Shown piece by piece: positions 4,466 through 55,415 of a DNA stretch of 64,000 nt (the first letter of the stretch is position 1; each line of letters opens with the position of its first letter). The DNA lies in IMG/VR virus record IMGVR_UViG_3300042887_005053, positions 1 through 64,000 of that record; one strand, given 5' to 3'. A model generated the notes under the pieces. The model had not been told where the DNA came from and did not search any database. It saw only the letters and a program-made list of their open reading frames with translations. The position numbers and the translations under genes were made by a program.

Positions 4466-4657
4466 TTAATCTGTCAAAAATTCTAACTTTTCTTCACGAA
4501 TAAGTTGAACAATTTCATTATATCTCATTTCAAGACAATCTAAAGTTGTTAAACCTAATTGTATTCTTAGATCAAAGAGTTGATCAGAAGAAATCTTTAA
4601 GTCAACATTTCTATAGAAAATAGAACCTTCAGATAAATATAAGTTTTTAGATTTCAC
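4466..4657 (-). CDS. Small protein with C-terminal tag
   Basis: Ends IREEKLEFLTD. Confidence 0.6.
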   Translation of the reverse strand: MKSKNLYLSEGSIFYRNVDLKISSDQLFDLRIQLGLTTLDCLEMRYNEIVQLIREEKLEFLTD

Positions 4658-4694
4658 TAATTAATATATATGATAAATTAAAATTAGTTTTTTT

Positions 4695-5954
4695 ATGATT
4701 TCAAAATATCAATCATTCAAATTAGATTCAATTTTAGAATCTTTATTACTTGAAAGTAAATTATATTTTTCAGATAGGCTTTTTTCTTTAATTAGTTCAC
4801 TTCCTTCAAATAAAGTAAAAGACTTATTAATAAATCTTCAGAAATCTGGTAAAGACTTAAATCTTAATCAGAATTACTTTGATTTTTCGGATTCTAAAGA
4901 AGAAGTTACTTTTATTCAAGATAGAAGAGCACAATCTATTTTAGGTGACCAACCAATGAAATTTAAAACTAATTCTAATGCTTCAAGTGCTTATCTTACT
5001 TTCAATAAGAAAAATGATGATACCTATACAAATCAATTAATTTTTGATGATTTGAATTTTGATCCAGAGACTTCGAGTAAACAAATACCAGGTTCAGATG
5101 TTGTCGGAGAAATAGTTGCTGAAACACCATCAAGAAAAACACCTGGTAAAATCTATATTTTATTTAAGTGGAAAAATGGTGATTCGGATGATTTTGTAGT
5201 ATTGAATAAAACAGCTGTTTCAAGTTATGACGATAGAATCGATAGAATTTGGCAATTGACTAAAAATCCAATTAGAATTGGAAGGGCTATTAGGTCTGTT
5301 ATCAATGCAGCTGGTGAAACAGTAACAGATGCTGAGATTGAACAATTTGTTAATGACTATAAGTCTGCTTGGGATATTATGAATGATGCATTTTCTAAGT
5401 TTGATATAGTTAACTCTGATAGTATTGCACATTGGTATTCTAATAATCAGTATGAAGGAGGTGGTCGATCTACTTTAGGAAATTCTTGTATGGCTGAGGT
5501 TGATTCAGATTTTTTTGATATCTATGTAGCTAATACTAGGGTTTGTAGTTTAGTTATTCTTTATGGTGATCAAGGTAAGGTAATTGATGGTAAATTCAAA
5601 GGTACTAAAATTAGAGGAAGAGCTTTACTTTGGAAAACTAATGAAGGTGATATGTTTATGGATAGAATCTATTACAATAACGAATCAGATGTTCAGTTAT
5701 TTAAGAGATTTGCTGAAAAGAATGGTTGGTGGTATAAAAGCTCTCAAGATTCAGATACAGATTTTCAAGCATCAAATGGTTCAAATGCTAAATATCCAAC
5801 TTACACAGTAACATTAGAAGAAGTACACTTTGATAATTATCCTTATGTTGATACAATGTGTTATTTAAATAAATCTACTAGAAAAATCAGTAACAATACA
5901 TCTGATATGAGAGAGGAAATGAGAAGTACCTCTGGATATCTTGACGAGATATAA
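4695..5954 (+). CDS. SCM/GRALLW/MDRIY-family protein, late paralog of 45586-46791
   Basis: LGNSCM, GRALLW, FMDRIY, YPYVDT; TTAATATATA at 4661-4670. Confidence 0.75.
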   Translation: MISKYQSFKLDSILESLLLESKLYFSDRLFSLISSLPSNKVKDLLINLQKSGKDLNLNQNYFDFSDSKEEVTFIQDRRAQSILGDQPMKFKTNSNASSAYLTFNKKNDDTYTNQLIFDDLNFDPETSSKQIPGSDVVGEIVAETPSRKTPGKIYILFKWKNGDSDDFVVLNKTAVSSYDDRIDRIWQLTKNPIRIGRAIRSVINAAGETVTDAEIEQFVNDYKSAWDIMNDAFSKFDIVNSDSIAHWYSNNQYEGGGRSTLGNSCMAEVDSDFFDIYVANTRVCSLVILYGDQGKVIDGKFKGTKIRGRALLWKTNEGDMFMDRIYYNNESDVQLFKRFAEKNGWWYKSSQDSDTDFQASNGSNAKYPTYTVTLEEVHFDNYPYVDTMCYLNKSTRKISNNTSDMREEMRSTSGYLDEI

Positions 5955-6020
5955 TTTTTTTAATAATTTTAAAACTTTTTAATCTACTGTTCCTATACTA
6001 TTAAGTAAGTGACGAAATAG

Positions 6021-6061
6021 TCTGACAATATGTCAGATTTATTTTTTGGCACATCGTTTGA
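6021..6061 (+). promoter_or_regulatory. Palindromic operator plus sigma54-like -24/-12 element upstream of dnaK
   Basis: TCTGACA-ATA-TGTCAGA (6021-6037) and TGGCAC-N5-TTGA (6047-6061). Confidence 0.55.
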
Positions 6062-6088
6062 AATATTAATTGTAAAAAACAATAAATT

Positions 6089-9039: not shown

Positions 9040-9132
9040 ATGAAAGAAAATAATCTAAAATGGGAAATGAGATGGATAACTCGTTTATCGAAAATAATTA
9101 AAATTTTAAGGAAAATTAAATTTATTTTCTAA
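9040..9132 (+). CDS. 30-aa microprotein carrying the tag motif (not in ORF track)
   Basis: MKENNLKWEMRWITRLSKIIKILRKIKFIF; stop overlaps next start (TAATG). Confidence 0.55.
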   Translation: MKENNLKWEMRWITRLSKIIKILRKIKFIF

Positions 9133-9377
9133 TGATAACTCAAGAAATTAATATAACACCTCAAGAACTATCAAATTACATTAACATTTGTGATGAGAAA
9201 AGAGTTTCGATTTATAACCAAAAATACACTAGAGCTGCACAACTAAGAGACTTTCAAAGAGAAATCACAAAAAAGTATCCTTCTTTAGAAGATTTTACTC
9301 TGGAATATTTAAAAAACGAACTTCTTCAAATACAAAGAACACAAAAAATAGATTCAATAATTAATGGCCAAGTTTGA
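9132..9377 (+). CDS. UVR-like helical hairpin protein with C-terminal tag
   Basis: SIYNQKYTRAAQLRDFQREI; ends QRTQKIDSIINGQV. Confidence 0.6.
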   Translation: MITQEINITPQELSNYINICDEKRVSIYNQKYTRAAQLRDFQREITKKYPSLEDFTLEYLKNELLQIQRTQKIDSIINGQV

Positions 9378-13368: not shown

Positions 13369-13785
13369 TTAAAGCTTAACAATTTCTAATCCTGACTTTT
13401 CTAAAAAATTAAGTCCATCTGAGTCTTTGTAAAACTCACCATAGACTAATCTTTTTATTCCTGATTGAAGAATAAGTTTACTACAATCTTTACAAGGAGA
13501 ATGTGTAATATAAATAGTAGCATCTTTACAAGAATGTCCATTTTTAGCACACTTTAATATAGCATTTGCTTCGGCGTGTATTACATACCAATGAGTTAGA
13601 TTATCAGAATCTTCACAAACATTATCAAAACCAGTTGGTGATCCATTATGACCATCAGAGATAATCATACCATCCTTAACTATAAGTGAACCTACTTGTT
13701 TTCGAACACAATGTGAAAGTGTAGACCACTCTTTGGCCATTTTCAAATAAACTTGATCGTATCTCAGTTGTTTATTTTTTTCCAT
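13369..13785 (-). CDS. dCMP deaminase
   Basis: HAEANAI and SPCKDC zinc motifs. Confidence 0.93.
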   Translation of the reverse strand: MEKNKQLRYDQVYLKMAKEWSTLSHCVRKQVGSLIVKDGMIISDGHNGSPTGFDNVCEDSDNLTHWYVIHAEANAILKCAKNGHSCKDATIYITHSPCKDCSKLILQSGIKRLVYGEFYKDSDGLNFLEKSGLEIVKL

Positions 13786-13955
13786 ATTTTTTCGAGTTTC
13801 ATCAACCGATCAATTCTGTAGAATTGTTTTTTAAGAATTTCACCAAGTTTTTTTGAATCAAAATCAAAATTTCGATCCTTCAAATTAGAAGGAGTTGAAT
13901 TAATTTTTGACTTTAATTCGCCTAGCTTTGAATTAAATTCGTTGGTATTATCCAT
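13764..13955 (-). CDS. Small protein with C-terminal tag
   Basis: DRLMKLEKIW near the C-terminus. Confidence 0.55.
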   Translation of the reverse strand: MDNTNEFNSKLGELKSKINSTPSNLKDRNFDFDSKKLGEILKKQFYRIDRLMKLEKIWKKINN

Positions 13956-14493
13956 TTGATTTCAGAATATCACCAATAGTTAAATCAACTAAGGTAGACC
14001 TACCGAAAATTAAAACTTCGACTTTTACTTTATTCTTATCCATATCAATCCAATCAACAGTTCCTTTGAACTTAGCAAAAGGTCCAGTTACGATTTCAAC
14101 AGTTTCACCAACGATGAATTGAGTTTCAATAACATTTTTATTACTTTCTTTCTCACCGATCATTCTATCTACTTCACTTTGTTTTAAGATAATTGCTACA
14201 CCTTTATTGTCTCTAAGGATGTTAGTTGCGCCGTTTGTAGATTTAACTAAGTGAGCTACCTTATCGATAGAATTAGTTTGAACAAAAACATATCCAGGAT
14301 AAAGAACTTTTTCTTTTTGAACCTTTTTGCCTTCTTTGATATCAATTGTTAATTGAGTTGGAATTAAAAAGACAACATCTTCACCATACTCTCTTTTCAT
14401 ATCAGACTTTAATCTTTCTGAAACTGATTTTTCTCGATTGTTTTGTACTTTAACTGTGTACCAATTTTTAGCTTTTACTTCTGTTTGAATCAT
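13948..14493 (-). CDS. nusG: Transcription elongation/antitermination factor
   Basis: NGN (WYTVKV...YPGYVFV) plus KOW (GETVEIVTGPFAKFKG...IFGR). Confidence 0.92.
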   Translation of the reverse strand: MIQTEVKAKNWYTVKVQNNREKSVSERLKSDMKREYGEDVVFLIPTQLTIDIKEGKKVQKEKVLYPGYVFVQTNSIDKVAHLVKSTNGATNILRDNKGVAIILKQSEVDRMIGEKESNKNVIETQFIVGETVEIVTGPFAKFKGTVDWIDMDKNKVKVEVLIFGRSTLVDLTIGDILKSNG

Positions 14494-14837
14494 ATTATTT
14501 GATTTATTTTAATATCTCGTATTTTTGATTTAAGTTTATTGAAATCACTAGGATTCCAAACATGTTCTTTCAACTTATTAACATTATCAATCAATTCAGA
14601 TTTGTGAATTGATTTTTTGATTATAGAATTTATTAAATCATTTGTTGTTCCTTTTTTATCATTACTATCTATCATATCAAGCATGATTGAGTCAGCTTCT
14701 TGATTTATTATAAAAATATTTTTTGATGATAAATCTTGAAAAATAATTTTAAGATGATGTGATAAGTACGACAATTCAGTAGAGGTATAAGTACTCCAAA
14801 AAACAATTTCCCAGTTATTTATTTCCTTTTTCACCAT
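14490..14837 (-). CDS. Hypothetical protein with C-terminal tag
   Basis: Ends IRDIKINQII. Confidence 0.7.
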   Translation of the reverse strand: MVKKEINNWEIVFWSTYTSTELSYLSHHLKIIFQDLSSKNIFIINQEADSIMLDMIDSNDKKGTTNDLINSIIKKSIHKSELIDNVNKLKEHVWNPSDFNKLKSKIRDIKINQII

Positions 14838-15225
14838 CTTTAATATACTTTAATTCCTCTTTAACCTCATCAATATTATACTTAATTAGTAGTTCTAGTT
14901 CTTCTTGCTTGATATTAAATTTTAATAATAACGAATTCATTTCTTTCTCTGTAAAAAGAGAATCATCTTTTGACTTTTCACTTTTACTCCAAAACCATTT
15001 GGGATAAGGCTTACTTTCCATAAAGTAATACCAAAGATCCATACCAATCACCTTATCTTGATTTTTGTCATTTAATAATTGTGCTAATTCTGGAAACTTT
15101 TTAGAGAAATACCTATTGAATATAAAAAAGAACTGTTCTTTCTGAGCTTCGGTAACAAACTTCCAGTTGTTTCGTTCTTGAAACATACATTTCGATATAG
15201 CAAGTACATTATTATCTATAATCAT
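14815..15225 (-). CDS. Hypothetical protein, possibly T4 gp62-like clamp-loader small subunit
   Basis: FIFNRYFS...PKWFWSK pattern and size; weak resemblance only. Confidence 0.35.
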   Translation of the reverse strand: MIIDNNVLAISKCMFQERNNWKFVTEAQKEQFFFIFNRYFSKKFPELAQLLNDKNQDKVIGMDLWYYFMESKPYPKWFWSKSEKSKDDSLFTEKEMNSLLLKFNIKQEELELLIKYNIDEVKEELKYIKDGEKGNK

Positions 15226-15731
15226 AAAATTTCATCTATTTTCATATCTCTATATGACTCTAAATCGATAAGTTTAACAAACTCAATAGGAAAAATGGTA
15301 TCATCAAAATCAACTTTTGGAGAAATGACTTTTTCATCAATTTGAATGTAATTACCATCTTCTAGTTCATACTCCATACATCCAGTCTCGTAATTAAATA
15401 CTTTTCTAACTATTGGAGATCTTCTATTCTTAAGCTTTTCAGATATTGAATTTGTTATTTTATCTAATACTCTTTCAAGATTGTCTCCTTGATTGGTTAT
15501 TTTGCTGAGCAGATCATAATAATGCCAACAAAGTTCAAGATAGATAGCAATTTTTAACATTTGTTGATCATCTAACCTAGTTTTTTTGAGTTTAGTCTCA
15601 ATAATTGGATACCATTTAAGGCTAATGGTTTCTTTTTTTGATAAAATCTTTTTCACAAGATCTGATTGACCTTGGATAAACTCTTCAAAAGTAGGTATTG
15701 TGAAAATATATTCAGGTCTTAAAACGTTCAT
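15222..15731 (-). CDS. Hypothetical protein with C-terminal tag
   Basis: Ends YRDMKIDEIL; start uncertain. Confidence 0.65.
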   Translation of the reverse strand: MNVLRPEYIFTIPTFEEFIQGQSDLVKKILSKKETISLKWYPIIETKLKKTRLDDQQMLKIAIYLELCWHYYDLLSKITNQGDNLERVLDKITNSISEKLKNRRSPIVRKVFNYETGCMEYELEDGNYIQIDEKVISPKVDFDDTIFPIEFVKLIDLESYRDMKIDEIL

Positions 15732-16714: not shown

Positions 16715-16740
16715 TATATACTCTTAATATTACTTTGTTT
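16715..16740 (-). promoter_or_regulatory. Putative middle promoter
   Basis: AAAC-N18-TATA heading the flap nuclease-nusG-dCMP deaminase operon. Confidence 0.55.
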
Positions 16741-17044
16741 CTAAAATGTGATCTAACTTATTTTCTCTGAGATAAACCTTGTATTTTGATTCTAAAATCA
16801 CTTTCAATTCTTCAGTAAATGAAACTTTTTGCTTTCTGATTTCTTCATAGTATTTCCATCCAAGACAATTAATTAAAGCAATAGTTTGTGCAATTTGGAA
16901 ATCACTATAACCTTCAATAGTTATTTCTTCATCCATTAAAACATAAGTTGATTTCTGATATGAAATCGTGTTATGATTTGTTGTTGTTCCTGCAAAAGGA
17001 TAAGTGATATTAGAGTTAGACGGATTATAAAGTTGATTGGCCAT
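16730..17044 (-). CDS. Hypothetical protein with C-terminal tag
   Basis: Ends LRENKLDHILETK. Confidence 0.7.
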   Translation of the reverse strand: MANQLYNPSNSNITYPFAGTTTNHNTISYQKSTYVLMDEEITIEGYSDFQIAQTIALINCLGWKYYEEIRKQKVSFTEELKVILESKYKVYLRENKLDHILETK

Positions 17045-18975: not shown

Positions 18976-19477
18976 CAGTGAGGACTGGATAATAAAAAAT
19001 AATACTATTTATTATCACAGATTAGTTGATATTCCTATCTTAAAAGAAAGAAAAGGAATAGTTTGGGTTGCTCTCGATCGAAGAGTTAGGAAACAAGTAC
19101 TAAGAATAATAAATCATTTAGTAAGTAACAATGTCAAATTTTATCTAACAACTAGATTCAACATTTCACAAAAAGATATCTTCAAAGAAGATTTAGTTAC
19201 TATAATTGAAAACTATATACTTGCTCTCACTGATGAGTTTTTCTTTGATGCGGTATTTGATAGTAAATTTGATTATGTTAAGAATCTAACCGACTTTATG
19301 ACTGATTATGATTGTCATAGATTATTCAAGTCACCATATGAAAAAATCAAGAAAGCTTATTTAAGTGAAAAAACAGACTGGTATACAATGAGAAAATATT
19401 ATTTAATAAAAAAAGAATATATCAGAGACTCAATACGAACGTTAGAAAGAGAGATAAAAATTAGTCTATTTCTTTAA
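18947..19477 (+). CDS. Hypothetical protein with C-terminal tag
   Basis: Ends EREIKISLFL. Confidence 0.7.
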   Translation: MNLDFYLPNNSEDWIIKNNTIYYHRLVDIPILKERKGIVWVALDRRVRKQVLRIINHLVSNNVKFYLTTRFNISQKDIFKEDLVTIIENYILALTDEFFFDAVFDSKFDYVKNLTDFMTDYDCHRLFKSPYEKIKKAYLSEKTDWYTMRKYYLIKKEYIRDSIRTLEREIKISLFL

Positions 19478-19578: not shown

Positions 19579-19794
19579 ATGAAAGAAAAAATTTCAACAT
19601 TTTGTCTGATTATAGCGATGTGGTTAAATCCATTTGGCTTCGACGCAGTTCAACTGATGTTAATCAAGTTAACAGGATCCTTATTGACGTCCAACTTAAT
19701 TTTATATTGCCTCTCGGCACTATTTTTTGGTTTTTATTTTTACTTCTCTGGAACTAATCCACTAAATTTCATATCTGGGAAAACTAAGAAATAA
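19579..19794 (+). CDS. Small membrane protein
   Basis: Two hydrophobic segments around NPFGFD. Confidence 0.6.
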   Translation: MKEKISTFCLIIAMWLNPFGFDAVQLMLIKLTGSLLTSNLILYCLSALFFGFYFYFSGTNPLNFISGKTKK

Positions 19795-20077
19795 TTGAAT
19801 TAATTCTTTCATCTCTTATCTCATCTGAATCTAGAAAATTTTTTTTGAACTCTTTCTCGTAAATCGGTGACCAAATAAACTCTCTTTCAGTTTGTATATA
19901 ATAATAAATCGGTGGAAACATATCTGTTGTTCCTCCTTTTTCGTGTTCTTCTGGTAGTCTAAATTTATAGTAAGATCCTTTTTTCCATTCAACATAATCT
20001 TCACCATAGTTTTTACCTTTTACTGGATAAAGATTAGTATTTTTTTTAAATACAGTTCGTTTACAATATACCTTCAT
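19784..20077 (-). CDS. Small protein with C-terminal tag
   Basis: Ends IRDERINSIIS. Confidence 0.7.
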   Translation of the reverse strand: MKVYCKRTVFKKNTNLYPVKGKNYGEDYVEWKKGSYYKFRLPEEHEKGGTTDMFPPIYYYIQTEREFIWSPIYEKEFKKNFLDSDEIRDERINSIIS

Positions 20078-20333
20078 TTACAATATCTGAAATTTTTTGA
20101 TCTCTGAGTTGAATAGATTGCCAATTTTTGAATTCTTCTTCATGAAACACTTTGTTTGCCAATTCCCAGACATGTTCCATTACTGTGTTTGGATCATTCA
20201 TTCCACCAAATTTACCTTCACAAATGTCTTTTTTTTCAATAGAAGTTAGAATAGAAATTGTTGCCAGTAGTAGTTTACCCTCAACTGAATCTGTGGTAAA
20301 GTACCCAAATTTACTATATTCTTCTTTTATCAT
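20061..20333 (-). CDS. Small protein with C-terminal tag
   Basis: LRDQKISDIV near the C-terminus. Confidence 0.7.
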   Translation of the reverse strand: MIKEEYSKFGYFTTDSVEGKLLLATISILTSIEKKDICEGKFGGMNDPNTVMEHVWELANKVFHEEEFKNWQSIQLRDQKISDIVNEGIL

Positions 20334-23654: not shown

Positions 23655-23893
23655 AAGTAATTTGTGTAAGTAATATAAGTTGGGAGAGATTGCCACTTAC
23701 TGTTGGTGACATGTATGATGTAATTGAAAAAGTTAATATACCATTTTCACCCACTAGATATGATGATCAAAGTGGTCCATTTTACAAAATAAAGTGTGAT
23801 AACGGTGAAGAGAAACACATTGATTCTGATAGATTTCGTGAGTTGACTTTAGATGAAAAAAGAGAATTAAAGCTCAAAGAATTAGATATATGA
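23651..23893 (+). CDS. Small protein with C-terminal tag
   Basis: Ends KRELKLKELDI. Confidence 0.7.
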   Translation: MKVICVSNISWERLPLTVGDMYDVIEKVNIPFSPTRYDDQSGPFYKIKCDNGEEKHIDSDRFRELTLDEKRELKLKELDI

Positions 23894-24153
23894 TATATCC
23901 TTCAAGAGTTAAAGGCAAAGAATATCCGCTCAAAAAAGGAGATATTGTTGTTTGTATAACTCTCTATTTTGAAGAGTTTACTTATGGAAAGCAATACAAA
24001 CTTTATAGTGATACTCTTGGGTCGATTCTTCCGATAGAATCTGACTTTGGAAATCTACCTCTTCCTTCATACTACAGTCCAACTGGTTATTACTTTTTAC
24101 CTCTTGAAATTTGGCGTGAACTTAAAATAAATAAAGTCTTAGAAGTTGATTAG
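23890..24153 (+). CDS. Small protein with C-terminal tag
   Basis: Ends WRELKINKVLEVD. Confidence 0.7.
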   Translation: MIYPSRVKGKEYPLKKGDIVVCITLYFEEFTYGKQYKLYSDTLGSILPIESDFGNLPLPSYYSPTGYYFLPLEIWRELKINKVLEVD

Positions 24154-26691: not shown

Positions 26692-27159
26692 ATGAATGTC
26701 GCAAACTCACCTGAGATGAATAAATTGTTGAATCTAATTAGATTCAACTGTAACTTCTCTGATTACTGTGATAATAAGTTGATAGATCAGTCACCAGATT
26801 ACTTGATTGAAAAGTATAGTCATTGGATTTCATTTGATCCTGTTACAAGGTTTCCTTATTATACTCCTGATTCTTGTAGTAACTTCATAACGAAATATTA
26901 CAAAAGATGGGGATCTGAAAGAAGTGAGTTAGTCAGAAGAGAGTTACTTTATTTAGAGCAGTCTAAACATCTTAATTTATTAACAATGGTTAGATTATTT
27001 GAAACTTATTTTGGTCCAATTCATAAGATTAGTCCTAATCCTAAGAAAGGTTTACATGTCAACATTGAAAATGAATTTATACCACATGTAATAGAGAAAA
27101 ATAAAAATAATTTGAATGTAATTTTGAGAGACTTACAAATAGAACAACTCATAAAATGA
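26692..27159 (+). CDS. Early protein with C-terminal tag (start revised)
   Basis: TATCTTTG 4 nt upstream; ends LRDLQIEQLIK. Confidence 0.7.
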   Translation: MNVANSPEMNKLLNLIRFNCNFSDYCDNKLIDQSPDYLIEKYSHWISFDPVTRFPYYTPDSCSNFITKYYKRWGSERSELVRRELLYLEQSKHLNLLTMVRLFETYFGPIHKISPNPKKGLHVNIENEFIPHVIEKNKNNLNVILRDLQIEQLIK

Positions 27160-27542
27160 ATAAAGATAGTAAAATAATAGTCTCTGACGAATTTGTAAAA
27201 GCTTATAAGCTTTTTAATGTAATTAAACTTGATTTATCTAATCTATCAAGACAAGAACTACTCTTACTTTTAGTAGTAGCGGTAGATGTTTTCAGTGAAG
27301 AAAACTCAGTAGTAATCGACAATTTTAGACCATTTCAATCTGAAATTAATATTATCTTAGATTTATTATCAGATAAAGACATTGATGATCCAGATTTACT
27401 TAATCTTGCTAATTTAACTAATGAGAAGTATATAGATACCTCTAAAATAGAAGATAGCTTAGGAAACGATCTACCAAAGCCACTGACTAATAATGAAGCT
27501 ATTGAAATGAGGAGAACTATTGGAATTGACAAATTAATTTGA
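27156..27542 (+). CDS. Hypothetical protein with C-terminal tag
   Basis: Ends RRTIGIDKLI. Confidence 0.65.
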   Translation: MNKDSKIIVSDEFVKAYKLFNVIKLDLSNLSRQELLLLLVVAVDVFSEENSVVIDNFRPFQSEINIILDLLSDKDIDDPDLLNLANLTNEKYIDTSKIEDSLGNDLPKPLTNNEAIEMRRTIGIDKLI

Positions 27543-37980: not shown

Positions 37981-38195
37981 TGGACTTGAATAATATACCA
38001 ATTTGTATTGGCGGAATCGATTACGAAGTTCATTCCAGTTTTTTTAATAGGTTTAAAGTAGTAGAAGAACGTCTTATCACAGATACTTACTTTATAAAAG
38101 GTGAGGATTCTACTGGATTTTTTTATTTGTCTGTTCATAAAAACTTCTACGACCTAGTAAAAAGAGACTCAAAAATATCTAAAATTTTAGAGTAA
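37980..38195 (+). CDS. Small protein with C-terminal tag (start revised)
   Basis: TAATG overlap with iscA; ends KRDSKISKILE. Confidence 0.7.
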   Translation: MDLNNIPICIGGIDYEVHSSFFNRFKVVEERLITDTYFIKGEDSTGFFYLSVHKNFYDLVKRDSKISKILE

Positions 38196-38198
38196 AAA

Positions 38199-42648: not shown

Positions 42649-42927
42649 ATGAATAAGTCTAAAGTTTGGGTAACAGATAGAGTAAATAATTTTTCTTTCG
42701 AAAAAGGCGATGTTGTTTATTTAGCCAGAAAGAAGATCAATGGATACCCTAAATTTTTAGATTTTGAGACTAGTTATGTAGTTTATGAAGTAGCTGGTGA
42801 TAAAATAGTAATTCACGAATCCTCTAAAGTGGCTAACATAAGAAACAATCATAAAATACATCATAGTTATTTAATAAGTCGGCAAGTTTTAAGAGATGAA
42901 ACTATCAAAGATTTACTCTCAGATTAG
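42649..42927 (+). CDS. Small protein with C-terminal tag
   Basis: Ends LRDETIKDLLSD. Confidence 0.7.
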   Translation: MNKSKVWVTDRVNNFSFEKGDVVYLARKKINGYPKFLDFETSYVVYEVAGDKIVIHESSKVANIRNNHKIHHSYLISRQVLRDETIKDLLSD

Positions 42928-43156
42928 TTGTCTTGTTGGTAGACACGATTGGCAATATTCAAGTACCACAGATCATAAAAAGATTACTTATGATGGTCTT
43001 GAACCTCATGAATTTTCAAGGATTTGTTCAAAATGTTTTAAAAAGCAAAAAAGAAAAATATTTGATTTAGGTCGAAACATGATTTGGATTGACACAAGTG
43101 AATATTCAATTTCAGAATTAAGAAAAATAAACTTAAACAAACTGCTGGAAGATTAG
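42896..43156 (+). CDS. DUF1660-like protein with C-terminal tag
   Basis: CLVGRHDW...CSKC; ends LRKINLNKLLED. Confidence 0.65.
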   Translation: MKLSKIYSQISCLVGRHDWQYSSTTDHKKITYDGLEPHEFSRICSKCFKKQKRKIFDLGRNMIWIDTSEYSISELRKINLNKLLED

Positions 43157-43176: not shown

Positions 43177-43395
43177 ATGAAATTCAAACCAGGTGATTTA
43201 GTTATTAAAAATACCGGTGGTAATAAGATGAGAATCTTATCACTTGAGAATAACCAAATACAGTGTGGATGGTTCACAGAGAGTTACCACGAGTCTATAT
43301 TTGACGAAAAAGAACTCTTACCATATAGTCAGTATGAAAAGGTCAGAATTACTGCTAAAAGAGACGATTTAATCAACCAAATACTTTTCAAATAA
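43177..43395 (+). CDS. YodC/DUF2158-like protein with C-terminal tag
   Basis: FKPGDLV...GGNKM...CGWF; ends KRDDLINQILFK. Confidence 0.75.
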   Translation: MKFKPGDLVIKNTGGNKMRILSLENNQIQCGWFTESYHESIFDEKELLPYSQYEKVRITAKRDDLINQILFK

Positions 43396-43432
43396 TTTGT
43401 TTTTTTGAAATTTTATCCTTATCTTTGTATTT

Positions 43433-43993: not shown

Positions 43994-44052
43994 ATTTAAA
44001 AATTTGTTTATTCGGAATTTTATAACTATTTTTGTTATCTAAAATAATATCT

Positions 44053-44913
44053 ATGAAAAATTATAAAGACTACAACAAACAAGAAATCTTTAATGTACTT
44101 GATAACATAACAATTGAAAAGGTGGCTAACCAAGTTATCACTAAATACAGAGATACTGTTATTAACATCACAAATGTATCTAATCGATATGAAGTCTTTG
44201 ACATAGTTAAATATTTGAAAAACAAAATTGAACTGATTGAGAAAAACTTTAATATACAAAAATATTCTTTACATCTAACCAGAGGTAAACAATATCTTCA
44301 ACTTATTTCAGACAAAATAGAAGTTGGTGGTGTTGAATTCTACAAGTCATTCTATATTCTAAATTCAACAGACAAGTCAAGACGACTTAGTTTTAATGTT
44401 GGTCTTTACTCAGAGTCTAAAAACTTTTATATAATTAGTGCAAATAACGCTAGTTTAACTAAAAAACATCTAACAGGAGTAACACAAGCTGCTGAAGAAG
44501 CCTCTGAAGGATTAAATGGTGAAACATTCGATCAACAAATCGAATCACTAAACTCACTTGTTGGTCATAACATATTGTTTTCGAATCTACGAAAAGTAAT
44601 ACTTGGTGACAAAGAAGAGATCCCACAAGTTAATCATAGAAAGTTCGACGCATTCAAAAACTCTATTAGATTCGCTAATTCCGATGGTAGAATTTCACTC
44701 ACTAATGAACAAAGAGAGCAACTCTTAGTTGATTCAGAGAAGTTAACATCTGTTACTCACGACTTTTATATCAGTGCATTTTGGGCTTTTCAAGTTTACT
44801 TGAGTTTGTTCAGAAAACAAGACTCACATGTTATTAAAAATGAATCTGAAAGAATTATGAAGATTACACAATGGGCAGTTCGTAATTCAGTGTTAGAAGA
44901 ACTTGGAATCTAA
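44053..44913 (+). CDS. DUF932-like early protein with C-terminal tag (start revised)
   Basis: ILNSTDKSRRLSFNVGLY; TTTG-N20-TATTTTTG upstream; ends VRNSVLEELGI. Confidence 0.55.
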   Translation: MKNYKDYNKQEIFNVLDNITIEKVANQVITKYRDTVINITNVSNRYEVFDIVKYLKNKIELIEKNFNIQKYSLHLTRGKQYLQLISDKIEVGGVEFYKSFYILNSTDKSRRLSFNVGLYSESKNFYIISANNASLTKKHLTGVTQAAEEASEGLNGETFDQQIESLNSLVGHNILFSNLRKVILGDKEEIPQVNHRKFDAFKNSIRFANSDGRISLTNEQREQLLVDSEKLTSVTHDFYISAFWAFQVYLSLFRKQDSHVIKNESERIMKITQWAVRNSVLEELGI

Positions 44914-45538: not shown

Positions 45539-45585
45539 TTTTTTTATTTAAAATATTTAACTTATATTTGTAAAAATCTAAATTT

Positions 45586-47562: not shown

Positions 47563-50500
47563 TTATACTTTAGTTAAATGATAACTAATCGTTAAGTTAA
47601 AAGAAGCATTTAATCCACTACCAACTGAACTTGGTAGTGTTGGATTTCCATAAGTTATTTGTGAAGAAAACACCTGAGCCGTTCCACTTCTAATTACTGG
47701 ACTTTGGCCTTTCACGAGTGTTGATCTTGGATCATTTGGTGAGAACTCACCAAATCGAACAGCTTTATAAACTCTACTCTGTGTAGAGGTTAACATAAAA
47801 TCTACAATTTGTGGTTTATTACTTACACCATCCCCAATCATTATTTGTTCATTAGTTGAGTAACCAGTTGCTCCAGCTCCAAATACCTCTACTATACACT
47901 CGTCTATAACAACAACTGAATCTATTGGAACATCAATATCAAGACTTACTGGATTATCTCCTAAATTTTGAATTATTGTATCATCTAAATATTTTGTTAC
48001 TATTTTTTTCTCGTTGAACTGATCTAAATTAATTTTGCTAACATCTTTTTTAATTAACGGTTTAGCATTTGTGATAACATAACCAGTATTAGGTGAACCT
48101 TTTATAGGTGTTATTTCTTGTGTTATTGGGACTGATACTCCATCAACATTACAATCAACTGCCAACCACTCAAAACCAAGGAAATTATATTCTTCGACAC
48201 TCTCTACTACTCCTCCAATTTCACTACACTTTTCAATGGTCTCTTCCCATTCATCTTGTGATATAAAGCCAGAATAATCTTCATTCGGATTATAACCAGT
48301 GTTTGTGCCAATTAATAATTTAGCTTCTGATACTTTTGCTTTTGGTTGATATTTTTTGAATTTTGTATTAAATTCAGTTGGTTCACCTTTTGAGCCTTTA
48401 GTTTGAAGTTTCGTAAACTGAAACTCCCAAACTCTTTGTGGTTGTGCAGATAAAGATAAGCTTTGTGTAGATCCACCTTCATATCTTGCGATAAATGTTG
48501 GATTTTCAGCTGTGTAATCCATTCCAGCATATACTCTTTGAAAAGATCTAGATGATGTGTATCCTACATATATCACTGGTGATTTTAGTTTGTTAGGTGT
48601 ACCAAAAGTTATATAACTATCAGAGTGTAGATACATTCTATCATAATAAAGATCGTCATATTTAATTAATATCGGTAATCTCATACTACTATTTTCACCA
48701 AAATAAGAGAAATTTTGTTCCTTATCACCAGTGTTTAACATACCAACACCATTAACTGGTTGTGAGTCAATAGAACTTATACGACCAATCACCATGATAC
48801 TTTGAGTACCGCCTTCTCCATGAACAGATCTAGTTAAATTAACAGTTAAAGCTTTAGCAAAATCACCTTCAGCATTAATTAAGAAATTAGAATCTAATGA
48901 CCAGTCTTGAGAAATACTAGTTCTATCGTTTAATATTACAATTTCTCTCTTACCTAATCTTGTTAGATCTCCGGTTTTTCTAATTGATACATTGTTATAA
49001 GTAGTAAAGTCTCCAGTGACTAATATTCTGTTTTCAAAAATTCCAGTTCCACTTGGAGCTTTAGTTATATCAAAAACATTTCCATTAAATCCATCTCCAA
49101 AATTTTGACTATGTGGAGTATCATAATCACCTTCTAATCTAATTATACGATTATAAGTAACTCCGTTATATTGAGTGAAATTGCCACCGATTATTAAAGT
49201 ATTGTTTAGTGTGTCTTCATAAATAGTATTTACTCTACCATTAAATCCACTTGCTGTAGTGTTTAATGTTCCATCAACATTAAGAACAATAAATTTATCA
49301 CAAGAGATTCCATCAAATGATGTAAAGTCACCACCAACAAATATCTTTGTTTTATCCTCACTTAACTTAATAGTAAATACTTTATTATTGAAACCAGTAC
49401 CAATATTAGTAAGAAAAGTACTATCAATTGCTCCGGTTGAGTTGACTCTAACAATTCTATTTACAGTTGTAAAAGATAAATCATTAGGTGATTGTTTCCA
49501 TCCAGTAAATTCACCAGCTATGATATAATCGTCAGGATCAGGTGAGTTATTCAAAACAACTATTGATCTAACTGGTCCATTCACTCTCATTTCAAATGTG
49601 TTATCTATAGTTCCACTATCATTAGAGTTATTGATTCTTATTAAATAAGGTATATTCTCTTCATCGTACTGTTCAAATAATCCACCAACTAAAATTCTAC
49701 CACTGTTATCTGTAACTACAGTATGAATAATTTGACCAGGTAAATCATTTACATCACTACTAAATGATTCCGATACAAAGTAATCAGAGTAAAAATTAAT
49801 ATTTCTTGTGCCATCGTTAAGTAGCTTTGATAAAAACCCAACACTAAATGTTGTTCCTCCGTTAGCAGTCACACCTGGATACCCACCACCTAAAATTACT
49901 TCACTGTTGAACTCAGTTATTACTGATAGATGATAATCTTCACCTTCATCCCAACCAGTATGTAGTTCAACGCCACCTGGACCTTCATAAATTGGGTATC
50001 CACCTGGTTTATAACCAATAACAGTCCAAAGACCAGATTCCAAGTCAGGTACACATTGATAATTACTACAAACAAAACCGTTAGGACATAAATCATTCTC
50101 TAGTGAACAACCAAGTCCAGATACTAATGCAGAAGTTATAACTTCTCTTATGCAGTACCCATCAACACAAACATATCCAACAGGACACTCATCGTCTGCA
50201 TTACAGCTTAACACTTCATAGTCTTCACCTTCATCCCAACCAGTATGTAGTTCAACACCACCTGGACCTTGATAAATAGGATAACCACCTGGCTTTTGAC
50301 CGATTTCTACCCATAATCCGGATGCTAAGTCAGGTATACACTCACCATCTAAACAATAAAAACCTTCTGGACAACCGCCATCGATTTGACAAGCAAGGCC
50401 TGAACTCAAATTAGAAGTAATAATTTGTAGAACACAGTATCCACCAACACATACATATCCACTTGGACAATCTGAATTAATCTCACATTCTAAAATTGTT

Positions 50501-53070: not shown

Positions 53071-54122
53071 TATTGATTTAGTATTTTTTGAATCTCGGCA
53101 ACTTTGTCTTTGTTTTTATCATCTTGAATAAATTCGGCGAATTTTACAACTTGTCCCATTTTACCTTCATCCTGCTTTATTTTTCCAAGAACTTCTTTTG
53201 CCTTTGCTGCATTTTCACCAGGCTCTTCAGCAGGTCCTATTATTTCAGCATAACTCTTTTTAATAGTTGGTTTTCCATCTTTATCTAAAAGCACCACACT
53301 ATCTGGTCTATCTTGATCGTTCAACGAATCAATTGTCTTAACACCAACTATATTTGCTTGATCTTCTGGTTTTTTCTTAGGGTCATAATCAGACTTCTCT
53401 TTGTCTTTTAACAAGTAAATTACAGGTGTTTTTTTATCAAAAAGCTCCTTTAATTTATCATAGTTCATTGAGTCATCTTTTTGACCACTTTTCTTCTTTG
53501 CTTCATCAAATGCCTTTTTTACTTCTTCTTCTGTGAAATTCTTGTCAACATCAATTTGTAAAGACTTTTGTAGATCATCAAAGAATTTATTAGCAACTGC
53601 TTTCTTTGCCTTTAGATCTTTTGCCTTATTAACTTGATCAATATAGTTTTTCTTTGAAAATTTGTAGTTAATATCCTTTTTAAGTATACCTCTTTGTGGG
53701 TCTAAAACACCTACTAGTCCTACCCAATCAGCTGCTTTATTTCCCAGTAATAAAGCTTTAGCTATTTCTTTGATTGCAGCAGATTTATCTTTACCAAATG
53801 CTGATTCAACGTCTTTTCCGATATTTTCAGCAAGTTGTACTAGAGTGTTAATCATATTATCCATAACTCCAATAACTGAAGTTTCATCTTGAAGATTATT
53901 AACTTCTTTTTGTGCAGCATCAATAGCTTGATTGATATTAGACATCAAAACATCTTTTATCGAGTCTGGATCGTCTTCCTTGAACATTTTTTTGAAGTCA
54001 TTGACTAAATCTTTGAATGGTGCAGAAAAAACACCAGCTAATTTTCCTAAAGCGCCTTTAATTATACCACCTATGAATTCTTCGTTAATTTGTTGGTATT
54101 CTTTAAATTTTTGTACATCCAT
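53070..54122 (-). CDS. Helical Lys/Asp-rich late protein with CTS-like N-terminus
   Basis: MDVQKFKEYQQINEE; TAATATATA at 54143-54151. Confidence 0.7.
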   Translation of the reverse strand: MDVQKFKEYQQINEEFIGGIIKGALGKLAGVFSAPFKDLVNDFKKMFKEDDPDSIKDVLMSNINQAIDAAQKEVNNLQDETSVIGVMDNMINTLVQLAENIGKDVESAFGKDKSAAIKEIAKALLLGNKAADWVGLVGVLDPQRGILKKDINYKFSKKNYIDQVNKAKDLKAKKAVANKFFDDLQKSLQIDVDKNFTEEEVKKAFDEAKKKSGQKDDSMNYDKLKELFDKKTPVIYLLKDKEKSDYDPKKKPEDQANIVGVKTIDSLNDQDRPDSVVLLDKDGKPTIKKSYAEIIGPAEEPGENAAKAKEVLGKIKQDEGKMGQVVKFAEFIQDDKNKDKVAEIQKILNQ

Positions 54123-54218
54123 CTTGAAAAATATATTTAATCTATATATTATTTATTGTGGATCAATATTCAAAACAAAAAAGAGAAGTATCAATATAAT
54201 AATTAAAATATTTTTTTT

Positions 54219-54788
54219 ATGACTTGGCAAGAATATTTACCACTAGCTGAAAAAACCTTATCAACACAGTTTAATTGTGATGACTTATTTCATCAAAAAA
54301 TACTTCATTCTGTAATTGGATCTCTAACAGAAGTTGAAGAAATACTTGAAAACTATGTTAACGGAGAATTAATTACAGATGTTAACAAACAAGGTTCAAT
54401 TGCAGAAGAAACGGCTGATATATTTTGGTACATTTCTATTTTATACAGAGAACTTGAAATAACAGATCATCAGTATAATATTGAAAAGAAAAACCCATTT
54501 GAGATTCTTTTAGACTTTACTAAAGTTTCATTAAAATTTTTAGATTTGTTAAAAAAGAAAATCTATTATAACAAAGACATCGATAATTCCTTGATGATTG
54601 ATTTGTCATCTAAAATGTATTGTTTAATGGTAAACTTTTGTTATCAATACAATACAGATATATCAAATATTCTTGATAAGAATATAGATAAATTAAGAGC
54701 AAGATATGGAGATAAGTTTTCTTCCGAAAAAGCAATTAATAGAAACTTAGAAGTTGAAAAACAAATTTTAGAAAATGGAAAATCTTAA
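54219..54788 (+). CDS. MazG-like nucleotide pyrophosphohydrolase
   Basis: EVEE...EETADIFWY; NIDKLRARY. Confidence 0.8.
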   Translation: MTWQEYLPLAEKTLSTQFNCDDLFHQKILHSVIGSLTEVEEILENYVNGELITDVNKQGSIAEETADIFWYISILYRELEITDHQYNIEKKNPFEILLDFTKVSLKFLDLLKKKIYYNKDIDNSLMIDLSSKMYCLMVNFCYQYNTDISNILDKNIDKLRARYGDKFSSEKAINRNLEVEKQILENGKS

Positions 54789-55128
54789 ACATTATTTTAG
54801 AAATATTCAGTTAAGAAACAAAATGCTTACTCCTGATCTTAAAAAACTTCAAGCTCAGTTAGAAATGGCATTTGAGAGTAATATACAAGAAGCTGGTGTA
54901 ATTAATCCTGGGTATTTTTCATATTTTACACCAATTCTTGAGGAGTTCAAAAACGCAAAAGTCATTTCAACCTATCATATTTCAGAAGAACAATTTAGTG
55001 ATTCTTATAGTGGTAAACTTGTTAAAGTACCAGTTGTAGATTTATTTTCAAGTGATAGGTCTTCAAATCATAGAATTTTTGTTTTACCAGCTTCTCTTTT
55101 GAGAACTTTCAACATCGATAATTTGTAA
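54775..55128 (+). CDS. Hypothetical protein with C-terminal tag
   Basis: Ends LRTFNIDNL. Confidence 0.65.
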   Translation: MENLKHYFRNIQLRNKMLTPDLKKLQAQLEMAFESNIQEAGVINPGYFSYFTPILEEFKNAKVISTYHISEEQFSDSYSGKLVKVPVVDLFSSDRSSNHRIFVLPASLLRTFNIDNL

Positions 55129-55157
55129 TATTAGATTATTTGATTTATATTTGTAAT

Positions 55158-55415
55158 ATGAAGAATCTGTCAAATAAAGAGAAAAACAGAAGAAAGTTTC
55201 AAAAGATGTACAAATCACTTGAAAATAAACTTCATGATTCTAATTTAATTTGGTGGAATTCATTATCAATGAAAGCAAGATATTCTTTCTTATTTAAATG
55301 GATTTCTGCTAAGAGTAATATGAAGTTCAAGCATTTTCTTAAAGAGAATCAGTTTAGATATCAACCAAGTATTTCCAACTTTAGAGAAGCATCAATCGAA
55401 CATTTATTAAAATAA
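55158..55415 (+). CDS. Basic early protein with C-terminal tag (start revised)
   Basis: TATATTTG 4 nt upstream; ends FREASIEHLLK. Confidence 0.65.
   Translation: MKNLSNKEKNRRKFQKMYKSLENKLHDSNLIWWNSLSMKARYSFLFKWISAKSNMKFKHFLKENQFRYQPSISNFREASIEHLLK

What the first reader, a model, noticed from the sequence alone, without database searches (positions are those of the whole stretch)
4466..55415. A shared C-terminal tag, R-x-x-x-[IL]-x-x-[IL]-[IL], on about 21 unrelated phage proteins
Seen, at or within a few residues of the stop: REEKLEFL (4466), RLSKIIKIL (9040), RTQKIDSII (9132), RLMKLEKIW (13764), RDIKINQII (14490), RDMKIDEIL (15222), RENKLDHIL (16730), REIKISLFL (18947), RDERINSII (19784), RDQKISDIV (20061), RELKLKEL (23651), RELKINKVL (23890), RDLQIEQLI (26692), RTIGIDKLI (27156), RDSKISKIL (37980), RDETIKDLL (42649), RKINLNKLL (42896), RDDLINQIL (43177), RNSVLEEL (44053), RTFNIDNL (54775), REASIEHLL (55158). 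The upstream bodies are unrelated, and some are recognisable folds with the tag appended (YodC-like, DUF932-like, UVR-like). One DUF1660-like protein has it (42896) while its relative at 24785 does not. Core enzymes and structural genes lack it, and most carriers sit in early/middle operons. Inference: an amphipathic helix with an invariant Arg, acting as a portable docking, localisation or degradation signal read by one hub. Candidate hubs are the MoxR AAA+/vWA pair, DnaK, host Clp proteases, a sliding clamp or a phage compartment. I do not recognise this as a described system.
Basis: partly seen in the sequence, partly recalled or inferred. Interest (0 to 1): 0.92.

Follow-up and report, generated by a model that had tools for sequence, protein, structure and literature searches.

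The report
Shared C-terminal tag on phage ORFans
About one in five proteins of this huge Bacteroidota phage and its relatives, almost all of them small, mutually unrelated and of unknown function, end in the same ~10-residue helix (R-D-x-K-I-x-x-I-L); it behaves like an undescribed address label read by one common partner.

Summary
All 21 listed C-termini are in the window. 22 of 90 ORFs carry R-x3-[ILV]-x2-[ILVF] 8-16 residues from the stop, against 2.5 in shuffled tails. In the related 635-kb phage LR745206.1 the count is 197 of 931 ORFs, against 19 expected.

The signal acts on the protein. Synonymous codons at the tag match genome usage. No DNA repeat family covers it, and it occurs whatever lies downstream.

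The bodies are unrelated (195 BLAST clusters of 197), small and soluble. They are almost pure ORFans: 0 of 62 hit Pfam, while 62 size-matched controls hit 29 families. Orthologues keep the tag at 23-45% body identity. Bacteroidota chromosomal DNA and most related phages lack it.

Carriers lean towards host-type (TAnnTTTG) promoter units. A second, mutually exclusive N-terminal label (MKYLKxFNE, like the T4 capsid-targeting sequence) marks another 9% of ORFs in phage-promoter units.

Best reading: a portable docking helix that marks the accessory, mainly early proteome for one reader. The phage's own ClpC-like/ClpP and DnaK machinery is my leading but unproven candidate. I found no description of it in the literature.

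The parts
4466..4498 (-). tag REEKLEFLTD at the end of ORF 4466-4657 (63 aa)
9082..9132 (+). RLSKIIKIL plus 7 residues at the end of a 30-aa ORF (9040-9132). Doubtful gene and doubtful carrier.
9336..9377 (+). tag RTQKIDSIINGQV, ORF 9132-9377 (81 aa)
13764..13808 (-). tag RLMKLEKIWKKINN, ORF 13764-13955 (63 aa)
14490..14519 (-). tag RDIKINQII-stop, ORF 14490-14837 (115 aa)
15222..15251 (-). tag RDMKIDEIL-stop, ORF 15222-15755 (177 aa)
16730..16768 (-). tag RENKLDHILETK, ORF 16730-17044 (104 aa). The LR745206 orthologue (38% id) ends RDRKIDEVIKK.
19448..19477 (+). tag REIKISLFL-stop, ORF 18947-19477 (176 aa). The orthologue (27% id) ends RDIQINMIL.
19784..19816 (-). tag RDERINSIIS, ORF 19784-20077 (97 aa). 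The orthologue keeps the tag.
20061..20105 (-). tag RDQKISDIVNEGIL, ORF 20061-20333 (90 aa)
23861..23893 (+). tag RELKLKELDI, ORF 23651-23893 (80 aa)
24115..24153 (+). tag RELKINKVLEVD, ORF 23890-24153 (87 aa). The orthologue keeps the tag.
27127..27159 (+). tag RDLQIEQLIK, ORF 26665-27159 (164 aa). The orthologue (23% id) keeps the tag.
27513..27542 (+). tag RTIGIDKLI-stop, ORF 27156-27542 (128 aa). The orthologue ends RDAKIDIINEK.
38163..38195 (+). tag RDSKISKILE, ORF 37950-38195 (81 aa), followed directly by a Bacteroidota-type promoter
42892..42927 (+). tag RDETIKDLLSD, ORF 42649-42927 (92 aa). The orthologue keeps the tag.
43121..43156 (+). tag RKINLNKLLED, ORF 42896-43156 (86 aa)
43360..43395 (+). 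tag RDDLINQILFK on a DUF2158 (YodC-like) beta-barrel, ORF 43177-43395 (72 aa). AlphaFold gives a barrel at residues 8-49 and one helix at 50-70. More than 60 homologues keep the tag.
44881..44913 (+). type-B-like end RNSVLEELGI-stop on a 293-aa conserved core protein (ORF 44032-44913). Membership is uncertain and the end may be intrinsic to the fold.
55102..55128 (+). weak tag RTFNIDNL-stop, ORF 54775-55128 (117 aa)
55383..55415 (+). tag REASIEHLLK, ORF 55140-55415 (91 aa). The orthologue ends REAAIDLLLKNK.
3380..3652 (+). the only window ORF with the second, N-terminal label (MKYLKKFNEN...). It is not a C-tag carrier and is listed because the two labels form one picture.

Best explanation
SHOWN. 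The tag is selected at the amino-acid level. It is a terminal helix of about 12 residues:
- polar N-cap at -3;
- R at position 0;
- D, E or N at +1;
- K at +3;
- I or L at +4 and at +7;
- L, I or F at +8, or G-I-stop in subtype B;
- then 1-2 polar residues and the stop.

It sits on about 20% of the proteome of one clade of huge Bacteroidota phages. The carriers are small, soluble, mutually unrelated, fast-evolving ORFans. They are clustered in arrays and biased towards host-type promoter units. Orthologues keep the tag while their bodies diverge.

INFERRED. The helix is a portable docking label read by one common receptor (about 0.75).

MY COMMITMENT on reader and outcome (about 0.3). The label hands the accessory, mainly early proteome to the phage's own protein-quality-control machinery: the N-domain-less ClpC-like unfoldase with a ClpP-docking VGF loop, two ClpP-like proteins, and DnaK. 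The ClpC-like gene sits behind the phage-type promoter motif, so it would appear after the host-promoter genes. Early proteins would then be removed or remodelled together. Arg at 0 with K at +3 would fit an acidic pocket, and the I/L triad a groove.
For: - Enrichment and position.
- Protein-level selection: Arg, Ile and Leu codons at the tag match genome usage; no DNA repeat family covers the tag; the tag is present with convergent, distant or overlapping downstream genes.
- Unrelated bodies.
- ORFan status: Pfam 0 of 62 against 29 families in 62 size-matched controls; PHROGs 2 of 62.
- Retention: all 12 window carriers with an LR745206 orthologue keep the tag; about 100 DUF2158-type homologues down to roughly 35% identity keep it, while DUF2158 repeats in giant proteins lack it.
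- Helix: no Pro or Gly from -4 to +7; AlphaFold helix at residues 50-70 with lower pLDDT than the barrel.
- Not a host-wide feature: 36 observed against 28 expected in 1.23 Mb of Bacteroidota DNA.
- Promoter bias: 64 host-type against 29 phage-type units; N-label genes 5 against 65 (OR 28.7; OR 3.8 against other genes).
- Phage-encoded ClpC-like, two ClpP-like proteins, PrkA, a MoxR-type ATPase and DnaK. The ClpC-like gene is preceded by TAATATAA.
Against: - No binding was tested and no co-folding tool was available.
- The ClpC-like gene also occurs in relatives at 63% identity or less whose neighbourhoods show no tags, and in the contig of L118/L210, which is tag-free around its topoisomerase gene. 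Its presence therefore does not predict the tag.
- Classical C-terminal degrons depend on the last residues and the free carboxylate. Here the residues after +8 vary and up to 7 extra residues are tolerated.
- In the window itself carriers are not enriched in host-type units (5 host-type, 8 phage-type, 8 none).
- The promoter classes are assigned from motifs only, and the phage-type motif also precedes replication genes.
Confidence: 0.3

Rival explanations
1. Localisation label. The helix docks carriers onto one structure in the infected cell, such as a replication or transcription factory, a phage compartment, the host nucleoid or RNA polymerase. Its role is to concentrate them there, not to destroy them.
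For: The same anatomy as above. Two mutually exclusive labels, N-terminal and C-terminal, look like two destinations. Carriers lie among replication, RNA-repair and NusG-like genes.
Against: No compartment-shell or receptor gene was identified. The distribution among related phages is patchy. Nothing distinguishes this reading from turnover with the data in hand.
Confidence: 0.2
2. Capsid cargo signal. The helix binds the inside of the procapsid, as scaffold C-termini or encapsulin cargo-loading peptides do, so that hundreds of small counter-defence proteins are packaged and injected.
For: There is precedent: T4 internal proteins are a highly diverse set sharing only a short targeting sequence (PMC3012670; PMC8442874). 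Encapsulin cargo peptides are C-terminal (PMC8346489). R at 0 with K at +3 on a C-terminal helix recalls scaffold-coat contacts (my own knowledge of P22).
Against: A separate N-terminal label resembling the T4 CTS exists on 84 ORFs. It is almost never combined with the C-tag (1 of 84 against about 15 expected; 0 of 20 in independent loci). It sits in phage-promoter units with large and structural genes (5 against 65), whereas C-tag genes lean to host-type promoters (64 against 29). Carriers are nearly absent from the sheath and terminase region at 150-175 kb.
Confidence: 0.1
3. Sliding-clamp (PIP-box-like) or other replisome-hub motif. [DEN]-x-K-[IL]-x-x-[IL]-[ILF] has the spacing of Q-x-x-h-x-x-a-a.
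For: The spacing of apolar positions 4, 7 and 8 matches, and the motif is C-terminal with basic flanks (PIP-box definition from my own knowledge, reviewed in PMC6881253).
Against: Replication enzymes expected to bind a clamp (FEN/RNase H, topoisomerase, clamp loader) lack it. No carrier has a recognisable enzyme domain. Q and the aromatic pair are replaced, and the invariant residue is an Arg outside the PIP core. About 200 competitors for one clamp is implausible.
Confidence: 0.07
4. Homotypic or heterotypic assembly helix. The tags bind each other and bundle carriers into mixed oligomers or a condensate.
For: It is an amphipathic short helix with R, D and K positions that could pair between chains.
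Against: Nine to twelve residues with three apolar positions is very short for a stable bundle. An invariant Arg in the apolar face fits a pocket better than a zipper. Not tested.
Confidence: 0.08
5. No partner. A generic C-terminal helix cap stabilises young, marginally folded proteins or hides their ends from host proteases.
For: Carriers are ORFans. G at +8 with I at +9 in subtype B, and N or D at +9 in subtype A, resemble helix C-caps (Schellman motif from my own knowledge).
Against: A cap does not need one invariant Arg four residues before the first Ile or Leu, nor K at +3. The motif is clade-specific with lineage variants (RD.., RK.., RT..), which suggests co-evolution with a reader.
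Confidence: 0.07
6. Cryptic paralogy. All carriers descend from one small protein, and only the last helix is still recognisable.
For: Carriers form arrays (53 adjacent pairs against 28 expected).
Against: Weak similarities between carrier bodies (33 per 10,000 pairs at E<=1) are close to the carrier-to-non-carrier rate (23) and below the rate among non-carriers (60). Lengths run from 50 to 731 aa. One body is a DUF2158 barrel that exists elsewhere without the tag.
Confidence: 0.03
7. A nucleotide-level or translation-level signal (promoter, initiation region of the next gene, mobile element, or termination context) that is merely read through as protein.
For: The tag is A/T-rich, and many carriers overlap the next start codon.
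Against: Synonymous codon usage matches the genome background at 11 of 13 residue-position tests (p>0.05); the two exceptions are Ile at +7 (p=0.0006) and Leu at +8 (p=0.015). Arg is encoded by AGA, AGG and CGN. No DNA repeat family covers the tags, while promoters do form repeat families. 20-25% of small genes (60-200 aa) with a convergent or distant downstream neighbour still carry the tag. The distance to the stop varies from 8 to 16 residues.
Confidence: 0.01

Closest known systems
T4 capsid targeting sequence (CTS) of internal proteins
   Same: A roughly 10-residue portable terminal peptide is the only thing shared by a highly diverse set of small phage proteins. It directs them to one destination (PMC3012670, PMC8442874).
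   Different: The CTS is N-terminal, is cleaved after Glu by the prohead protease, and sits on late capsid cargo. This tag is C-terminal, has no evident cleavage site, is biased to host-type promoter units, and coexists with a separate CTS-like N-terminal label that excludes it.
Encapsulin cargo-loading peptides and microcompartment encapsulation peptides
   Same: Short terminal peptides or amphipathic helices appended to unrelated cargo and read by one shell protein. They are transferable to foreign proteins (PMC8346489, PMC11866011; microcompartment peptides from my own knowledge).
   Different: No sequence similarity. No dedicated shell gene was identified here. Those systems load a few cargo types, not about 200.
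C-terminal degrons and adaptor tethers of AAA+ proteases (ssrA, the MuA-type ClpX motif, the SspB ClpX-binding tail)
   Same: Short C-terminal signals that hand diverse proteins to one unfoldase. The phage encodes a ClpC-like ATPase with a ClpP-docking loop and two ClpP-like proteins.
   Different: Known degrons depend on the terminal residues and carboxylate and are not helical with a fixed internal Arg. No sequence match. Recognition was not tested.
PIP-box and clamp-binding motifs
   Same: The same h-x-x-h-h spacing, C-terminal location and basic flanks.
   Different: Q and the aromatic residues are absent, the invariant Arg lies outside the PIP core, and replisome enzymes here lack the tag.
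C-terminal translocation signals of type IV secretion substrates (Dot/Icm, VirB/D4)
   Same: Hundreds of unrelated, fast-evolving proteins, around 10% of a proteome, share only a short C-terminal signal read by one coupling machine (my own knowledge).
   Different: Those signals are compositional and disordered, not a defined helix. They are bacterial, and no such machine is evident in the phage.
UVR motif (PF02151)
   Same: A local ..[IL]-R-D-x-I-x-x-L helix. One true UVR motif ends ORF 41138-41719.
   Different: The hydrophobic register is shifted by one residue (+3/+6 against +4/+7/+8). The first helix of the hairpin is missing. Pfam finds no UVR in any carrier.

Membership tests
T4-type capsid targeting sequence | N-terminal position, about 10 residues starting at Met1 | tested here: not met
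   The tag is 8-16 residues from the C-terminus.
T4-type capsid targeting sequence | Prohead-protease site ([LI]-x-E then cleavage) bordering the signal | tested here: inconclusive
   Upstream positions show only weak I/L at -4 (27%) and E at -2 (21%). No cleavage data.
T4-type capsid targeting sequence | Carried by late-expressed head cargo | tested here: not met
   C-tag genes: 64 host-type against 29 phage-type promoter units. N-label genes: 5 against 65. Promoter timing is inferred from motifs only.
PIP-box / clamp-binding motif | Q-x-x-[ILM]-x-x-[FY]-[FY] consensus | tested here: not met
   Position 1 is D, E or N. Positions 7 and 8 are I, L, and L, I, G or F. Only the spacing is shared.
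PIP-box / clamp-binding motif | Present on replisome enzymes that use the clamp | tested here: not met
   FEN, topoisomerase II subunits and the clamp-loader homologue lack it. 0 of 62 carriers have any Pfam domain.
ssrA-like or MuA-like C-terminal degron | Recognition determinants in the last 3-6 residues and the free carboxylate | tested here: not met
   Residues after +8 are variable (D, N, K, E or up to 7 extra residues).
ssrA-like or MuA-like C-terminal degron | Tag-dependent degradation by a Clp or Lon protease | not testable with these tools
   Needs stability assays. Only the presence of ClpC-like and ClpP genes was shown.
Membrane-targeting amphipathic helix (MinD/FtsA type) | High hydrophobic moment with enough mean hydrophobicity | tested here: not met
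   Consensus <H> -0.49 and muH 0.24 for subtype A; muH 0.10 for subtype B. Only the rare basic subtype C reaches 0.47.
UVR motif PF02151 | Helical hairpin profile match | tested here: not met
   No carrier matches PF02151. The register is shifted by one residue against the true UVR end of ORF 41138-41719.
Encapsulin / microcompartment cargo peptide | A dedicated shell protein encoded with the cargo | not tested
   The full proteome was not scanned for shell families.
General Bacteroidota (host) C-terminal signal | Enrichment at C-termini of host proteins | tested here: not met
   1207 ORFs from 80 Bacteroidota loci: 36 observed against 28 expected.

The most novel reading that the evidence does not exclude
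Huge Bacteroidota phages run a two-label proteome-addressing code of their own.
- An N-terminal MK[YH]LKx[FY]xE label marks about 9% of ORFs. These lie in phage-promoter units, and the label is probably a capsid-targeting sequence.
- A mutually exclusive C-terminal R-D-x-K-[IL]-x-x-[IL]-[IL] label marks about 20% of ORFs, mostly ORFans in host-promoter units.
- The C-terminal label would be read by a so far unidentified virus-encoded receptor that sorts, times or destroys the whole accessory proteome.

This would be a virus-specific protein-sorting or turnover system with no described counterpart.
Probability: 0.35. Interest if true: 0.92.

Novelty: new variant of a known kind. Interest (0 to 1): 0.82.

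Why it matters
Most genes of huge phages are ORFans with no handle for study. A shared label splits that unknown fraction into classes that are handled together. It also gives one experimental hook (tag peptide, R-to-A control) for finding the machine that reads about 200 proteins per genome.

The tag also works as a simple sequence marker for recognising this phage clade and its accessory genes in metagenomes.

Tried and rejected
- Nucleotide-level signal: rejected by codon usage, by the absence of a DNA repeat family and by independence from downstream context.
- Host-wide motif: rejected.
- Cryptic paralogy: no excess of weak similarity between carrier bodies.
- Membrane helix: too polar, and carriers are not enriched in TM segments.
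- Known domain or peptide: a tag profile against PDB sequences gives only chance hits to the kinase HRDLKxxN loop at E of about 1. Pfam and PHROGs give essentially nothing for carriers.
- UVR relationship: register mismatch.
- ClpC-like ATPase as a phyletic marker of the tag: not exclusive.
- Fold of the 293-aa type-B-like protein: AlphaFold pLDDT 74, no Foldseek match below 0.08, so no functional hint.
- Foldseek of the DUF2158 carrier: only generic SH3/PWWP-like barrels.
- Megablast of the window against phage genomes: no match.
- Ten literature searches: no description of either label.
- Hub identification by whole-genome subtraction between tag-positive and tag-negative phages: not attempted, because the retrieval quota was insufficient.

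Full report
**Source and setting**

The window is 29.4% G+C. It is the first 64 kb of a 204-kb IMG/VR contig (IMGVR_UViG_3300042887_005053; 100% identity at the same coordinates).

Its topoisomerase II subunit is 68-70% identical to those of the uncultured 635-642-kb phages LR745206.1 and LR756502.1. Genomes of those sizes were reported as 'Mahaphages' predicted to infect Bacteroidetes (PMC7162821; PMC7950403).

Two results fit that host. The phage DnaK is 62-69% identical to DnaK in the 80 best cellular loci, and 77 of those 80 record titles name Bacteroidota taxa. Full Bacteroidota-type promoters (TTTG, a spacer, then TAnnTTTG) recur in front of about a dozen window genes (the motif as in PMC6847099 and PMC9723704).

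The window encodes DnaK, Rnl1, topoisomerase II, FEN, dCMP deaminase, a NusG-like protein, a CCA-adding enzyme, a rhomboid protease, a VWA-metallopeptidase, an ATPase (phrog_1297), a baseplate wedge protein and a 1570-aa fibre-like protein.

Yes. All 21 listed C-termini exist.

- R...[ILV]..[ILVF] with R 8-16 residues from the end occurs in 22 of 90 ORFs. The internal rate is 0.0026 per position, a 10-fold enrichment. Shuffled tails give a mean of 2.5 and a maximum of 9.
- A stricter pattern is 132-fold enriched.

**It is a clade-wide phenomenon**

I read LR745206.1 in 13 overlapping pieces.

- 197 of 931 ORFs carry the loose pattern against 19 expected. 106 carry the strict pattern against 2.5 expected.
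- The distance from R to the end peaks sharply at 10-11 residues.
- The tag is on 35-40% of ORFs of 75-150 aa and on 4% or fewer of ORFs above 300 aa.
- In independent contigs of the same clade, 77 of 1236 ORFs carry it.

The composition at each position is as follows.

| Position | Residues |
|---|---|
| -4 | K, I or L |
| -3 | polar (S, Q) |
| 0 | R |
| +1 | D 41%, E 19%, N 16% |
| +3 | K 62% |
| +4 | I or L, 96% |
| +7 | I or L, 88% |
| +8 | L, I or F, or G |
| after +8 | 1-2 polar residues, then stop |

There are three subtypes:
- A: RDxK[IL]xx[IL][IL][DNK].
- B: R..KL..LGI-stop, 32-33 copies in LR745206.1, partly in tandem gene arrays.
- C: RKxKIxx[IL]F, on tiny basic proteins.

**Protein level, not DNA level**

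- Synonymous codon usage matches the genome in 11 of 13 residue-position tests, including Arg at 0 (p = 0.67) and D, E and N at +1 and K at +3. The two exceptions are Ile at +7 (p = 0.0006) and Leu at +8 (p = 0.015).
- In the window, Arg is AGA, CGT, CGG or CGA.
- No DNA repeat family covers the tags, whereas promoters do form repeat families.
- Among small genes of 60-200 aa, the tag is found on 25% of those followed by a gene on the other strand, 20-22% of those with a same-strand gap, and 41% of those that overlap or abut the next gene. It is therefore not a by-product of the next gene's initiation region.

**Who carries it**

- Bodies are unrelated: 195 BLAST clusters of 197. There is no excess of weak similarity either: 33 per 10,000 carrier pairs at E<=1, against 23 for carrier to non-carrier pairs and 60 among non-carriers.
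- Carriers are soluble and of ordinary composition.
- They are almost pure ORFans. 0 of 62 carriers of at least 125 aa match Pfam at 1e-4, against 29 families among 62 size-matched non-carriers. Only 2 of 62 match any PHROG.
- They lie next to each other more often than chance: 53 adjacent pairs against 28 expected. They are nearly absent from the structural region.

**Selection**

All 12 window carriers that have an LR745206 orthologue keep the tag although the bodies are 23-45% identical. Only one non-carrier pairs with a tagged protein: the truncated 27583-28764, which matches the 731-aa carrier described below.

The DUF2158 carrier (43177-43395) has more than 60 close homologues and about 40 representatives at 50% identity that all keep the tag. 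DUF2158 repeats in giant proteins and a few short homologues lack it. AlphaFold gives a beta-barrel at residues 8-49 (pLDDT about 90) followed by one helix at 50-70 (pLDDT 66-79). This is an appended module.

A roughly 700-aa carrier keeps the tag between two clades at 34% identity. Its window orthologue (27583-28764) is truncated before the C-terminal domain and lacks the tag.

**Distribution**

| Status | Where |
|---|---|
| Strong | Clade with at least 66% topoisomerase identity; L003 and L144 |
| Variants | RKxKI.. in LR756504; RTKLIDKIL in LR756501 and L160; RKxKLxK[IL] in L163, L156 and L235 |
| Absent | Most relatives at 50-57% identity; LR756500; Salicola phage SCTP-2; Chryseobacterium phage MA9V-2 |

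The tag is also absent from 1.23 Mb of Bacteroidota chromosomal DNA, with 36 observed against 28 expected.

**A second label and two promoter classes**

While checking non-carriers I found an N-terminal motif, M-K-[YH]-[LI]-K-x-[FY]-[NEK]-E.

- It is on 84 of 931 LR745206 ORFs, against 30 internal matches in 186,000 positions.
- Only 1 of those 84 also has a good C-tag, where about 15 are expected (p = 1.4e-6). In independent loci the overlap is 0 of 20.
- It resembles the T4 capsid targeting sequence MKTYQEFIAE, which is the only feature shared by the diverse T4 internal proteins (PMC8442874; PMC3012670).
- It is also present in tag-negative relatives.

I assigned each gene to the nearest upstream promoter-like motif of its transcription unit.

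| Gene class | Host-type (TAnnTTTG) | Phage-type (AATATATA / TAATATAT) |
|---|---|---|
| C-tag genes | 64 | 29 |
| N-label genes | 5 | 65 |
| ORFs above 400 aa | 12 | 56 |
| Other genes | 122 | 208 |

The odds ratio is 28.7 for C-tag against N-label genes and 3.8 for C-tag against other genes.

The phage-type motif precedes the terminase, fibre-neighbour genes, PrkA, Rnl1 and the ClpC-like gene. In the window it also heads the FEN and topoisomerase operons. There the carriers split 5 host-type, 8 phage-type and 8 unassigned. The early bias is therefore a tendency inferred from motifs, not a rule.

**Candidate readers**

LR745206.1 encodes the following:
- a 701-aa two-ring Clp ATPase with no N-domain, whose VGF loop lies 127 residues after the second Walker A;
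- two ClpP-like proteins;
- PrkA;
- EF-G;
- a MoxR-type AAA_5 protein.

The window adds DnaK, an ATPase and a VWA-metallopeptidase.

The ClpC-like gene is widespread in huge-phage contigs, including tag-negative ones. It is therefore a candidate only.

A tag profile finds nothing meaningful in the PDB. The consensus helix is too polar for membrane binding.

**Conclusion**

The tag is an amino-acid-level, portable C-terminal helix that marks the accessory ORFan proteome of one clade of huge Bacteroidota phages.

I rate a shared docking function at about 0.75. My leading specific reading, at about 0.3, is hand-over to the phage's own Clp and chaperone machinery for timed removal or remodelling. 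Localisation (0.2) and capsid loading (0.1) remain open. DNA-level, host-wide, membrane and paralogy explanations are rejected.

Ten literature searches turned up no description of this tag or of the N-terminal label.

Noticed in passing
LR745206.1 (loci L005-L017); window 3380-3652 (+): A second shared label at the N-terminus, M-K-[YH]-[LI]-K-x-[FY]-[NEK]-E, on 84 of 931 ORFs. It is mutually exclusive with the C-tag, lies in phage-promoter units, and resembles the T4 capsid targeting sequence. It is also present in tag-negative relatives.
   Followed up: partly
window 27544-27587, 30313-30369, 38195-38238, 38273-38326, 38978-39031, 43391-43447, 43998-44054, 45524-45573, 55119-55162: Repeated full Bacteroidota-type promoters (TTTG, a spacer, then cTTATaTTTGTA) 12-37 nt before start codons. 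Several would give very short or no leaders. Some start directly after the stop codon of a tag carrier.
   Followed up: partly
LR745206.1 genome-wide; window upstream of 17601-18599 (-), 20362-22197 (-), 9040 (+): A phage-specific upstream motif, AATATATA / TAATATAT, is the commonest upstream 8-mer. It peaks at -15 and at -30 to -35 from the start codon, and it precedes terminase, fibre-neighbour, PrkA, Rnl1 and ClpC-like genes. It is probably a phage middle or late promoter.
   Followed up: partly
LR745206.1 423224-425329, 123556-124221, 75119-75859, 480112-482034, 30017-31981: The phage encodes a protein-handling and translation set: a ClpC-like two-ring AAA+ protein without an N-domain and with a VGF loop, two ClpP-like proteins, PrkA and EF-G.
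   Followed up: partly
window 24964-25542 (+): A phage-encoded rhomboid intramembrane protease (PF01694, E = 3.5e-29), next to a DUF6272 protein.
   Followed up: no
window 47563-52275 (-): A 1570-aa protein with collagen repeats, Cys-rich modules (DUF7107, EB) and a beta-propeller. It has internal repeats of 285 nt at 49937-50736. It is probably a fibre or adhesin.
   Followed up: no
window 27583-28764 (+): This ORF is a truncated version of a roughly 700-aa conserved tag carrier (LR745206 509007-511202; L003 13985-16075). The C-terminal domain and the tag are missing, and an unrelated 209-aa ORF follows.
   Followed up: partly
window 30904-31029 (+): Four tandem 30-33-nt repeats encoding a K-Q-D-Q-N-G-Q-rich linker inside the VWA-metallopeptidase gene.
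   Followed up: no
window 57579-57616 and 58169-58206: Two similar GAGAG/CTCTC hairpins followed by T-runs flank the AAA_28 gene 57616-58173. They look like intrinsic terminators.
   Followed up: no
LR745206.1, one of the 62 size-matched non-carriers (alignment A3): A phage protein with a type IX secretion C-terminal sorting domain (CHU_C / Por_Secre_tail) and SprB/PKD repeats. It is a host-type secretion signal on a phage protein.
   Followed up: no
window 9728-11065, 35166-36344, 36598-37338, 34253-35056: An RNA-repair set: T4 Rnl1-type ligase, a CCA-adding enzyme, a 2H phosphoesterase and an HD protein.
   Followed up: no
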